A stretch of 64,000 bases of DNA from Mizuhopecten yessoensis (Eukaryota). Positions within the stretch are counted from its first letter, which is position 1; each line of letters begins with the position of its first letter. Under the pieces are notes generated by a model, which did no database searches, was not told the DNA's origin, and was given only the letters and a program-made list of their open reading frames with translations. The stretch covers positions 309,473-373,472 of the forward strand of contig NW_018408732.1 in NCBI RefSeq assembly GCF_002113885.1, read 5' to 3'. Made by a program: the position numbers and the translations under genes. Of the stretch, positions 4,401 to 7,400 are shown piece after piece.

Positions 4401-7400
4401 GCTTCTGTGTTGTGTACAGAGGAAGTATGACGTCACATTAACATAAATTGTGTTTCTGTGTTGTGTTCAGAGGGAGTAGGACGTCACATTAACATTAATC
4501 GTTTTTCGGTGTTGTGTACAAAGTAAGAATGACGTCACATAATCAATAATTGTGTTTGTGTTGTGTACAGAGGAATTATGACGTCACATTAACATTAATT
4601 GAGTTACTGTGTTCTGTAAAGAGGAATAATGACGTCACATAATCATTAATTGTGTTTGTGTTGTGTACAGAGGAAGTAAGACTTTACGTTAACATTATTT
4701 TGTTTCTGTGTTGTGTACAGAGGAAGTATGACGTCACATTAACATAACTTGTGTTTCTGTGTTGTGTTCAGAGGCAGTATGACGTCACATTAACATTAAT
4801 TGTTTTTCTGTGTTGTATACAGAGGAAGTATGACGTCACATTAACATAAATTGTGTTTCTGTGTTGTGTTCAGAGGGAGTATGACGTCACATTAACATTA
4901 ATTGTTTTTCTGTGTTGTATACAGAGGAAGTATGACGTCACATTAACATAAATTGTGTTTCTGTGGTGTGTACAGAGGAAGTATGACGTCACATTAACAT
5001 TAATTGTTTTTCTGTGTTGTATACAGAGAAAGTATGACGTCACATTAACATAAATTGTGTTTCTGTGTTGTTTACAGAGGAAGTATGACGCCACATTAAC
5101 ATTATTGTGTTTCTGTGTTGTGTTCAGAGGGAGTATGACGTCACATTAACATTAATTGTTTTTCTGTGTTGTATACAGAGGAAGTATGATGTCACATTAA
5201 CATTAATTATTTTTCTGTGTTGTGTACAGAGGAAGTATGACGTCACATTAACATTAACTGTTTTTCTGTGTTGTGCACAGAGGAAGTATGACGTCACATT
5301 AACATTAATTGTGTTTCTGTGTTGTGTTCAGAGGAAGCATGACATCACATTAACATTAATTGTGTTTCTGTGTTGTGTATAGAGGAAGTATGACGTCACA
5401 TTAATATTAATTGTTTTTCTGTGTTGTCCACAGAGGAAGTATGACGTCAAATTAACATTAATTGTTTTTCTGTGTTGTGCACAGAGGAAGTATGACGTCA
5501 CATTAACATTAATGGTTTTTCTGTGTTGTGTACAGAGGAAGTGTGACCAATACTGGCCGGAAGTTGTATCCGAACCATTCTATTTCGGGGACCTTATCGT
5601 CCGCATCGACTCCGAATCCAATCTGCCTGACTACGTTATCCGGGTTATCAGTTTGCAGTTGGTAAGTATGCCATCCTCGTCATCACTATGAAGATGGTTA
5701 TAAGTACGTAACTCGTGTCATCAAGTTGTTACTACATTAATGGCGTCATCAGGTTCTGAGTCATACGTTATCATCGACGAACACGACTATCATGTAAACA
5801 TTAAGATTTTTACATCATTTGACGTTTTAAACTTGATGAATTGTATTTCAGAAAGAATAGTTGAATAATTGGATGTCAATTGAATATTAAGAACCAATCA
5901 CTTTCCTTTACACGAACTGATACATAGTGGATTTCGACTTTTTTTAAGTTGAGTTTTTATGTCATACTCAACAATGGCGTCCGAAATAGAAGGAAAGCTC
6001 TGATGAGATTACTGAAAGTTAGATATATATATATATATAAAGTAAACTGTGTCAATATACGATATGCCGCTCATGCAGAACAACAGGAAGAAGAAGATGA
6101 AGCAGGTTCACTACCTGAAGTGGCCTGACATGGGCTGCCCTGATACATCATGGCTCCTGCTAAACTTCGTACAGGACGTACGGCTCTTTATGCCTCACCA
6201 GAACCCTGGTCCTATAGTGGTGCACTGCAGGTATTAGGTCCAGGACTACACAGACCCTAAGAATATACTAAATCCCCAGTGATACATCCCAGGAAGGCAT
6301 GAACATTCCCTGATGCTTGTATATACTTTTACATCCATGGTCAGGGCGCATTGTATGTTTATGACCAGTGACGTGCATAGTGCAGGGTGTGTTATGGTTA
6401 AATTGCCGCCCTGGTGTACGTGTAATACTGTTTGTCGTAGAATGATAGTGAATCCCAGCATGACGTACGTTAGAACACGGGGTCACAGGCCCAGCATGTC
6501 GTACGTTAGAACACGGGGTCACAGGCCCAGCATGACGTACGTTAGAACACGGGGTCACAGGCCCAGCATGGTACTGTTATTCATCCTCAATGGCCCAGCA
6601 TGGTAATGATGTTAGTCCTCGGCGGCCCAGCATGGTACTGTTGTTCATCCGCAATGGCCCAGCATGGTACTGTTATTCATCCGCAATGGCCCAGCATGGT
6701 ACTGTTGTTCATCCTCAATGGCCCAGCATGGTAATGATGTTAGTCCTCGGCGGCCCAGCATGGTACTGTTGTTCATCCGCAATGGCCCAGCATGGCACTG
6801 TTGTTCATCCCCAATGGCCCAGCATGGTACTGTTGTTCATCCTCAATGTTGTCTCGCTTCCTACTATGTACATACCCTGCTTACTTAGCTCATTATATCA
6901 TGATTGGCGGTTGACTCTGGCCTGTTTTGAGGGGGTTTATCGTGAACACTCTTATTGTTCAGCTTATACATATCATCTGTATTTGCAGCTTGCGAAAATT
7001 TAAATCGAATATCTCTATGTAGCTTCCCTAATTATTCTGAGATTTCAATGGTAAATACCTAGCTTTGCATTATACTGAACAGGGGGACATCCAGAGGCAG
7101 GTCAAGCAACTTCTGTACCTAGCATGGCCTGACATGGGAACGCCTACAACCTCCAATAGCATGCTCCATTTCGTGGAGTCGTGTCGTAAACACAAAAATC
7201 CCTCTCTGCATGGTCCGATTGTTGTCCACTGCAGGTAATGGCTTCTCAGACATTCTCTTTCATTTAAAACAGCATAAATCATTATTACTCTTGAGAAATT
7301 AAATACCACCGATTCTATTACATGAATTTTAATTGATAATTAGTCATAACCAGGACACTGATATTATAATGGTATGTTTCCAATAACGATCTATATAAAG

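What the first reader, a model, noticed from the sequence alone, without database searches (positions are those of the whole stretch)
6079..7234. Swappable active site: two mutually exclusive exons encode the WPD loop and catalytic Cys of an R3 receptor PTP
Seen: two tandem exons of identical length (152 bp) and phase (0 in, 2 out), both with GT-AG ends, both open, both keeping WPDMGxP and GPIVVHC, yet only 23/50 aa identical by manual count. Including both shifts the frame to TAG at 7120-7122; skipping both also frameshifts to a stop in the next exon. The flanking exons are single copy. Known: this segment carries the general-acid Asp, the following helix and the nucleophilic Cys, and is normally one constitutive exon. 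Inference: an old duplication under purifying selection lets one receptor switch catalytic cores. Variant A has a basic patch NNRKKKMK and a Cys in the WPD loop (WPDMGCP); variant B has WPDMGTP, so kinetics, substrate choice or redox sensitivity may differ. I do not know of this arrangement in R3 PTPs but cannot search to confirm novelty.
Basis: partly seen in the sequence, partly recalled or inferred. Interest (0 to 1): 0.88.

Follow-up and report, generated by a model that had tools for sequence, protein, structure and literature searches.

The report
Alternative active-site exons in scallop phosphatase
A scallop receptor tyrosine phosphatase gene carries two interchangeable copies of the exon that builds the heart of its active site; the pair is real, is shared with oysters and mussels, and public gene models already use each copy in turn, but no paper found here describes it.

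Summary
Exons A (6079-6230) and B (7083-7234) are both 152 nt, AG/GT-bounded and phase 0 in, 2 out. They are 23/50 identical, and both encode the WPD loop through the catalytic His-Cys.

The window is from Mizuhopecten yessoensis, gene 'tyrosine-protein phosphatase 10D-like'. This is an R3-type receptor PTP: FN3-only ectodomain, one PTP domain, C-terminal PIYENA.

RefSeq isoforms X1, X2 and X4 use exon A. Isoform X3 and GenBank OWF41368 use exon B. X1 and X3 have the same length and differ only in this segment, so the mutually exclusive pair is already in public annotation.

The same tandem pair occurs in Saccostrea (two loci, each with A and B isoforms), Magallana gigas and Mytilus edulis. 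Pinctada, Tegillarca, a unionid and Octopus have only the A-like exon.

B exons form one clade, so the duplication is single and old. A keeps ancestral states, including the WPD-loop Cys. B is derived but constrained, about as much as flanking exon E3.

Including both or neither exon gives a premature stop. Both isoforms model as normal R3 PTP folds. No publication was found.

Verdict: a new member of a known kind. Its functional consequence is untested.

The parts
1359..1435 (+). PTP-domain exon E1 (..[26 protein letters not shown]); the gene's 5' part (FN3 ectodomain, TM, KNRY loop) lies upstream of the window
   Evidence: 100% match to P0316 from DHSRV onward
1764..1898 (+). PTP-domain exon E2 ([14 protein letters not shown]), donor AGG|GTACGT
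   Evidence: 45/45 identical to P0316
1865..2656 (+). 63/126-nt minisatellite that repeats the 3' end of E2 with its donor (7 copies of GGAAG|GGTACGT counting the true one)
2739..5547 (+). 51-nt minisatellite, about 55 copies, each repeating the acceptor and first ~14 nt of E3 (28 exact YACAG|AGGAAGT)
5536..5661 (+). PTP-domain exon E3 ([14 protein letters not shown]), ends in phase 0
6079..6230 (+). Alternative exon A (ancestral type): basic hairpin [18 protein letters not shown], helix alpha3, GPIVVHC; used in RefSeq isoforms X1, X2, X4
6231..7082 (+). 852-nt intron between A and B, with 36-nt (6454-6570) and 32/128-nt (6560-6848) minisatellites; too long for steric exclusion and no convincing docking/selector pairing
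7083..7234 (+). Alternative exon B (derived type): [16 protein letters not shown] helix start, GPIVVHC; used in RefSeq isoform X3 and GenBank OWF41368
7120..7122 (+). TAG reached if A and B are both included
7545..7683 (+). Exon E6: completes Ser of HCS, then P-loop AGVGRTG to Q-loop MVQTE
7653..7655 (+). TAA reached if both A and B are skipped
7840..7942 (+). Exon E7 ([12 protein letters not shown] + acidic tail ..DEDNCE), donor C|GTGAGT in phase 1
9561..9580 (+). Terminal coding exon: (C)CG ATC TAC GAG AAT GCG TGA = PIYENA stop, the R3-type C-terminal YxN motif

Best explanation
Exons A and B are a tandemly duplicated, mutually exclusive pair in the single catalytic domain of the Yesso scallop R3 receptor tyrosine phosphatase ('Ptp10D-like'). 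Each mRNA takes one of them. This yields two receptors that are identical except for 27 of 50 residues. Those 50 residues span the beta-strand before the WPD loop, the WPD loop with the general-acid Asp, helix alpha3, the following loop, and the strand that ends in the nucleophilic Cys. Both exons are 152 nt (2 mod 3), so including both or neither shifts the frame into a stop with exon junctions downstream. Such mRNAs should be removed by nonsense-mediated decay, and only A-only or B-only messages remain productive. The duplication happened once, before scallops, oysters and mussels diverged. A kept the ancestral sequence and B diverged, then settled under its own constraint. SHOWN: the anatomy, the frame logic, conservation of the pair, public isoform models using each exon, and retention of all catalytic residues and of the fold in both. 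INFERRED: that the choice is regulated by tissue, stage or condition; and that the two modules differ in WPD-loop dynamics or turnover, regulation, or partner contacts rather than in basic chemistry.
For: Anatomy and frames. Identity of the gene and both isoforms: every window exon is 100% identical to P0316. X1/X2/X4 carry A, while X3 and OWF41368 carry B; X1 and X3 are both 1927 aa and differ only at 1791-1833. Same pair elsewhere: Saccostrea L002 has A at 41371-41520 and B at 42636-42791, with isoform X2 using A and X1/X3 using B. A second Saccostrea locus has P0173 (A) and P0291 (B). A Magallana gigas model strings A and B together. Mytilus edulis L003 has A at 58843-58992 and B at 60423-60572. 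All of these have AG/GT ends and lengths of 2 mod 3. Single origin: the B clade is separated from A plus outgroups with 92/92 support. Constraint: nonsynonymous difference is 0.17-0.24 for A and 0.29-0.36 for B, against 0.22-0.30 for constitutive exon E3, with synonymous sites saturated. Saccostrea B against its paralogue gives dN/dS 0.15. Type-specific conserved residues are listed. Fold: AF2 gives pLDDT 80.4 and 80.7 with the same secondary structure, and block means over the exon region are about 85-94 in A and 83-94 in B. The best Foldseek hits are PTPRB/VE-PTP and Ptp10D for both. Precedent for frame/NMD-enforced two-exon clusters: PMC12772994.
Against: No RNA-seq or cDNA evidence could be examined here. 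Isoform models are predictions; that Gnomon builds variants from transcript evidence is my own knowledge, not checked. The relative usage of A and B is unknown. The pair is absent from Pinctada, Tegillarca, a unionid and Octopus, so it is dispensable in some lineages. NMD removal of double or skipped forms is inferred from stop positions only. No biochemical difference between the isoforms is shown.
Confidence: 0.85

Rival explanations
1. The two modules do not differ in catalysis. They differ in surfaces used for regulation or docking: the basic hairpin before the WPD loop (net charge about +5 in A, about +1 in B) and the exposed face of helix alpha3. On this view the switch changes partners, membrane contact or dimer-type regulation.
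For: Catalytic residues are identical in both. The most systematic A/B differences lie in the hairpin (positions 3-6), the residue before Trp (K vs A), the start of alpha3 (WLL vs polar-polar-M) and the alpha3-beta loop. Predicted secondary structure is unchanged.
Against: The differences also include the WPD-loop position after Gly (C vs T/I/V) and the hinge and alpha3 start. In PTP1B, by my own knowledge, these govern loop closure. So a kinetic effect is at least as plausible, and nothing was measured.
Confidence: 0.3
2. Redox-switch reading: the point of the swap is the presence (A) or absence (B) of a Cys in the WPD loop, which gives isoforms of different sensitivity to oxidation.
For: Cys at WPDxG-C-P is invariant in 7/7 A exons and 7/7 single-exon outgroups, and is never present in 9/9 B exons.
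Against: The Cys is an ancestral, widespread feature of this clade; 35 WPDxGCP matches occur among the 150 best representatives. No role for it in redox control is known to me. Many other positions are equally type-specific. The tools do not export coordinates, so no geometry could be measured.
Confidence: 0.15
3. One exon, most likely B, is a little-used relic or splicing noise without a distinct role.
For: B evolves faster than A (48-52% vs 59-73% identity between families). B is missing in Pinctada and Tegillarca.
Against: B keeps an open frame, splice sites, phase and all catalytic motifs in scallop, three oysters and mussel. It is as constrained as constitutive exon E3, and dN/dS is 0.15 in the one unsaturated pair. 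Annotators chose B as the only or main form in M. gigas, Ostrea, Mytilus and the scallop GenBank record. B-only paralogues exist.
Confidence: 0.06
4. Assembly artefact: two paralogues or haplotypes were collapsed into one locus.
For: The surrounding introns are full of minisatellites, which can confuse assemblers.
Against: The same order (E3, A, B, E6) occurs in independent assemblies of Saccostrea and Mytilus edulis. Both exon types also appear in a second Saccostrea locus and in a Magallana gigas model. The flanking exons are single copy.
Confidence: 0.01

Closest known systems
COQ-2 exons 6a/6e (helminths, annelids, molluscs; PMC7434440)
   Same: Two homologous, mutually exclusive exons of equal length remodel the core of an enzyme. 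One form resembles the pan-eukaryotic exon and the other is lineage-restricted with invariant diagnostic residues. It is also found in molluscs.
   Different: COQ-2 is a different enzyme (a polyprenyl transferase), and a demonstrated substrate switch (UQ vs RQ) has genetic proof. Here no functional difference is shown, and the distribution is limited to pteriomorph bivalves.
Sodium-channel SCN-alpha exons 5a/5b and other two-exon clusters whose length is not a multiple of three (PMC12772994; FGFR2 IIIb/IIIc by my own knowledge)
   Same: A tandem duplicate pair of equal length not divisible by three. Double inclusion or double skipping gives a premature stop, and NMD is proposed as the enforcer. 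The duplication is ancient.
   Different: Those exons encode channel or ligand-binding segments, not an enzyme active site. Regulatory intronic elements are known there and none was found here.
Kinase and metabolic-enzyme mutually exclusive exons (JNK 6a/6b, PKM 9/10, KHK 3a/3c; my own knowledge, not checked here)
   Same: Alternative homologous exons inside a catalytic domain change kinetics, regulation or substrate preference.
   Different: None of them is a protein tyrosine phosphatase, and none replaces the nucleophile-bearing strand together with the general-acid loop.
R3 receptor PTPs: Drosophila Ptp10D, vertebrate PTPRB/VE-PTP, PTPRJ, PTPRO, PTPRH (PMC5336234)
   Same: The architecture matches (FN3-only ectodomain, one PTP domain, C-terminal YxN). 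The catalytic domain is closest to Ptp10D and PTPRB in both sequence and fold.
   Different: The R3 evolution paper sampled no mollusc and mentions no alternative splicing (the words 'mollus' and 'alternative' occur 0 times). WPDMG replaces the usual WPDHG/WPDFG. It is not PTPRQ-like in chemistry despite some RefSeq names, because it has WPD rather than WPE.

Membership tests
Classical PTP catalytic domain (Pfam PF00102) | WPD loop with general-acid Asp | tested here: met
   WPDMG is present in both exons. W, P, D and G are invariant in all 23 A, B and outgroup exons.
Classical PTP catalytic domain (Pfam PF00102) | HCX5R(S/T) P-loop and Q-loop | tested here: met
   VVHC ends each alternative exon. 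E6 supplies SAGVGRTG and MVQTE, and E7 supplies DQY. The full domain scores E 9e-83 (A) and 1e-83 (B).
R3 receptor PTP | Ectodomain made only of fibronectin type III repeats | tested here: met
   P0320 and P0317 are the public products of this gene. Each has 10 fn3 stretches plus Dep-1-type Fn3 domains and no other ectodomain family. This part lies outside the window.
R3 receptor PTP | Single intracellular PTP domain | tested here: met
   There is one Y_phosphatase stretch and one set of motifs in the window. The stop comes 20 nt into the terminal exon at 9561-9580.
R3 receptor PTP | C-terminal YxN-hydrophobic motif | tested here: met
   The protein ends PIYENA. Orthologues end PIYANM, PIYENM, SIYMNV and PMYQNV... 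The last residue here is Ala.
R3 receptor PTP | Catalytic domain closest to known R3 members | tested here: met
   The best single-domain PDB sequences are Ptp10D (274/276 bits) and PTPRB (267/268). Foldseek's top hits are VE-PTP/PTPRB and Ptp10D, with TM 0.80-0.85.
PTPRQ-type phosphoinositide phosphatase | WPE in place of WPD (PMC5336234) | tested here: not met
   Both exons have WPD, so the 'PTPRQ-like' names given to the oyster orthologues do not imply PTPRQ chemistry.
Mutually exclusive exon pair from tandem exon duplication | Adjacent homologous exons of the same phase and compatible length | tested here: met
   Both are 152 nt with phase 0/2 and are 46% identical. Saccostrea has 152 and 158 nt, and Mytilus 152 and 152 nt.
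Mutually exclusive exon pair from tandem exon duplication | Mature mRNAs contain exactly one of the two | tested here: inconclusive
   Public isoform models contain exactly one exon: scallop X1/X2/X4 vs X3, and two Saccostrea loci. RNA reads themselves could not be examined with these tools.
Mutually exclusive exon pair from tandem exon duplication | Both or neither exon gives a non-productive message | tested here: met
   TAG at 7120-7122 with both exons. TAA at 7653-7655 with neither. Actual NMD was not tested.
Docking-site/selector RNA-structure MXE clusters (Dscam type) | Conserved complementary intronic elements next to the alternative exons | tested here: not met
   An inverted-repeat scan of 5662-7544 found only AT-rich low-complexity pairs. 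Weak or gapped pairings could be missed.

The most novel reading that the evidence does not exclude
Exon B is a neo-functionalised catalytic module kept for several hundred million years (my estimate from bivalve phylogeny). By replacing the WPD-loop Cys, the loop hinge and the start of helix alpha3, it would give the same receptor a second enzymatic personality: different loop-closure rate and turnover, oxidation sensitivity or substrate range, chosen by regulated splicing. That would be a natural, isogenic experiment on how sequence outside the catalytic residues sets PTP kinetics, and the first splice-selectable active-site module in a protein tyrosine phosphatase.
Probability: 0.35. Interest if true: 0.75.

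Novelty: new member of a known kind. Interest (0 to 1): 0.6.

Why it matters
PTP catalytic domains are usually treated as fixed units, with diversity coming from paralogues, ectodomain splicing or regulation. Here one receptor gene encodes two versions of the segment that carries the general acid, its mobile loop, the allosterically important helix alpha3 and the nucleophile. The arrangement has been kept across scallops, oysters and mussels.

If the two modules differ in rate, redox behaviour or specificity, they offer a natural matched pair for studying how the WPD-loop hinge and alpha3 tune PTP activity. They would also give a new layer of control of R3-type receptor signalling.

There is a practical point too. 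Automatic models sometimes mishandle the pair, by stringing both exons together (M. gigas A0A8W8J3A0) or by naming isoforms of one gene after different families.

Tried and rejected
1. A PTP-domain search of the 5.8-billion-protein set was swamped by two-domain LAR/PTP-sigma/delta isoforms whose two domains add up. It yielded only three useful oyster hits.
2. Searches limited to the 50-52-residue segment found only 4 hits each. The second of these did reveal the scallop protein that identified the window.
3. Exact look-ups failed for P0001 and P0304, and the Ostrea gene range was too long to fetch.
4. I looked for docking/selector RNA pairing and found nothing convincing.
5. A weak reverse-strand match in the Pinctada intron (E 0.006 in a 2-kb search) looked at first like a B relic. 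It has no WPD or other motif upstream, so I judged it chance.
6. I considered a candidate terminal exon with LIYDNM at 17706. I rejected it because no acceptor fits the conserved phase-1 donor of E7. The true terminal exon is at 9561 and matches P0316.
7. dN/dS between families is not computable because synonymous sites are saturated (pS 0.78-1.04). I used nonsynonymous proportions and one close paralogue pair instead.
8. Six literature searches were run. Four were aimed at a mutually exclusive exon in a PTP and found nothing relevant. One on oysters surfaced the COQ-2 paper, and one on NMD surfaced the SCN-alpha preprint.

Full report
**1. The observation**

The sequence is as described.
- Exon A is 6079-6230 and exon B is 7083-7234. 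Both are 152 nt, preceded by AG and followed by GT.
- Both are entered in phase 0 from the exon ending at 5661.
- Both end ...CAC TGC AG|gt, so the T at 7545 completes the Ser of [10 protein letters not shown].
- Ungapped identity is 23/50. MAFFT with two 3-residue gaps gives 26 identical columns.
- Each peptive matches Pfam Y_phosphatase positions 130-176 above the curated cut-off.
- With both exons included, the shifted frame stops at TAG 7120-7122. With neither, it stops at TAA 7653-7655.
- A six-frame motif scan shows one PTP domain in the 64 kb, with only this segment doubled.

**2. What and whose gene it is**

The spliced product was examined only through public protein ids that the tools returned.
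- A profile of the two exon peptides, searched against 1.84 billion representatives, gave bivalve R3-type receptors as best hits.
- A region-limited search then returned XP_021372257 of Mizuhopecten yessoensis, 'tyrosine-protein phosphatase 10D-like isoform X2' (P0316).
- Every coding exon in the window is identical to it: E1 1359-1435, E2 1764-1898, E3 5536-5661, A, E6 7545-7683, E7 7840-7942 and the 20-nt terminal exon 9561-9580.
- The window is therefore Yesso scallop, and the gene's 5' part lies upstream of it.
- The full protein has 10 fn3 stretches plus Dep-1-type Fn3 domains, one Y_phosphatase domain, and ends PIYENA.
- Its catalytic domain is closest in sequence and fold to Drosophila Ptp10D and vertebrate PTPRB/VE-PTP.
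- These are the defining R3 features given in PMC5336234. Both exons have WPD, not the WPE of PTPRQ.

**3. Mutually exclusive use is already in public models**

The 90% cluster of P0316 holds five proteins.
- X1 (XP_021372256), X2 and X4 carry exon A.
- X3 (XP_021372258) and the genome authors' OWF41368 carry exon B, letter for letter as in the window.
- X1 and X3 are both 1927 aa and differ only at 27 positions within 1791-1833.

I could not inspect RNA evidence. That NCBI's pipeline builds alternative variants from transcript alignments is my own knowledge.

**4. Conservation**

I fetched orthologous loci and scanned them with the window's exon peptides.

| Lineage / locus | Exons found |
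|---|---|
| Saccostrea cucullata L002 | E3, A (41371-41520), B (42636-42791), E6; isoform X2 uses A, X1/X3 use B |
| Saccostrea, second locus | P0173 (A) and P0291 (B) |
| Magallana gigas | One UniProt model strings A and part of B together; RefSeq models use B |
| Mytilus edulis L003 | A (58843-58992) and B (60423-60572); the model uses B |
| Pinctada imbricata, Tegillarca granosa, Potamilus (unionid), Octopus bimaculoides | Only an A-like exon, nothing B-like in the following intron |
| Paralogues: Saccostrea L005, M. galloprovincialis L006 | Only B |

- All these exons keep AG/GT ends, the TGC AG|gt end and a length of 2 mod 3.
- A maximum-likelihood tree of 23 exon peptides separates the nine B exons from all A exons plus single-exon outgroups (cephalopods, heterodonts, unionid, Limulus) with 92/92 support. 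With only 52 columns this is moderate evidence.
- The tree fits one duplication before scallops, oysters and mussels split, followed by losses in Pinctada and Tegillarca.

**5. Constraint**

- Between families, synonymous sites are saturated (pS 0.78-1.04).
- Nonsynonymous differences per site are 0.17-0.24 for A and 0.29-0.36 for B. They are 0.22-0.30 for constitutive exon E3 and 0.08-0.11 for E2.
- The one unsaturated comparison, Saccostrea B against its B-only paralogue, gives dN/dS 0.15.
- B is therefore faster than A but as constrained as a neighbouring constitutive exon.

Column by column, A keeps the outgroup state where B has its own conserved state.

| Position | A exons | B exons | Outgroups |
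|---|---|---|---|
| Residue before Trp | K (7/7) | A (8/9) | K (5/7) |
| Residue after WPDxG | C (7/7) | T/I/V (0/9 Cys) | C (7/7) |
| Third residue of the alpha3 start | L | M (9/9) | L (6/7) |
| Loop after alpha3 | H | P | varied |

- The hairpin before the loop is strongly basic in A and not in B.
There are 35 WPDxGCP matches among the 150 best representatives. Its loss is the derived feature of B.

**6. Structure**

- AlphaFold2 models of residues 1641-1912 gave mean pLDDT 80.4 (A isoform) and 80.7 (B isoform), with pTM 0.83 and 0.84 and the same secondary structure.
- The alternative exon covers model residues 151-200: strand 153-162, WPD loop 163-173, helix 174-186 (alpha3), a loop, and strand 196-200 ending at the Cys. 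Ten-residue block means over this region are about 85-94 for A and 83-94 for B.
- Both versions are therefore predicted to be ordinary, complete PTP domains.
- By my own knowledge of PTP1B, the residues after the WPD loop and alpha3 control loop closure and carry the allosteric site. A difference in turnover or regulation is therefore a reasonable, but untested, expectation.

**7. How exclusivity is achieved**

- The A-B intron is 852 nt, so steric exclusion is unlikely.
- All sites are GT-AG.
- No complementary docking/selector elements were found.
- The frame rule applies, as proposed for two-exon clusters such as SCN-alpha 5a/5b (PMC12772994): double inclusion and double skipping both create stops with junctions downstream.
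- Both alternative acceptors have poorer pyrimidine tracts than the E3 or terminal-exon acceptors. This would suit regulated use, but it is only an impression.

**8. Comparison and novelty**

- The kind is well known: mutually exclusive exons born by tandem exon duplication, including cases that remodel an enzyme core.
- The closest documented parallel is COQ-2 exons 6a/6e, which is also present in molluscs (PMC7434440).
- Four literature searches aimed at such an exon in a PTP found nothing. The R3 evolution paper sampled no mollusc and does not discuss splicing.
- I rate it a new member of a known kind. It is real, old and already present in annotation, but apparently undescribed and functionally unexplored.

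**9. Housekeeping**

- The single N at 32425 was left alone.
- No contig that I take for human was fetched; human PTPs appear only as names in PDB hit lists.
- No step needed referral.

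Noticed in passing
window 1865-2656 and 2739-5547: The E2-E3 intron is almost filled by two minisatellites that copy exon edges with their splice sites. 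A 63/126-nt unit repeats the end of E2 with its donor (7 GGAAG|GGTACGT including the true one). A 51-nt unit (about 55 copies) repeats the E3 acceptor and its first ~14 nt (28 exact YACAG|AGGAAGT), ending in the real exon. These are potential decoy splice sites; their effect is unknown.
   Followed up: partly
L003 53672-57656 (Mytilus edulis orthologue): The mussel shows the same habit. The 3' end of exon E1 (..[19 protein letters not shown]) is repeated more than 30 times in the downstream intron. Exon-edge minisatellites therefore recur in this gene in two bivalve orders, at different exons.
   Followed up: no
window about 12800-18000: A long low-complexity satellite with strongly negative GC skew (-0.45 to -0.89) lies downstream of the gene. 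It translates as endless TPLSSI-like or NTFII-like repeats.
   Followed up: no
window 18421-19228 (+) and 26757-27722 (+): These look like transposon remains. Two overlapping ORFs resemble a frameshifted Tc1/mariner-type transposase, and a 321-aa ORF resembles the C-terminal part of a non-LTR retrotransposon protein. This is judged by eye only and was not searched.
   Followed up: no
L005 (Saccostrea cucullata paralogue, P0030): This B-only paralogue has Pro in place of the essential P-loop Arg (HCSAGVGPTG). It may be a pseudophosphatase or a decaying copy.
   Followed up: no
P0292 (Magallana gigas A0A8W8J3A0); RefSeq names of the orthologues: Automatic annotation mishandles the pair. One model strings exon A and most of exon B into one protein. 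Isoforms of a single gene are also named after different families: 10D-like vs eta-like in scallop, 10D-like vs S-like in Saccostrea, and PTPRQ-like despite WPD.
   Followed up: partly
P0003 (943 aa, unidentified source): A representative protein contains the WPD-to-Cys segment twice, about 96 residues apart and nearly identical (693-751 and 789-847). This may be a recent two-exon duplication or a model or assembly artefact in another animal.
   Followed up: no
window 32425: A single N; left as it is.
   Followed up: no
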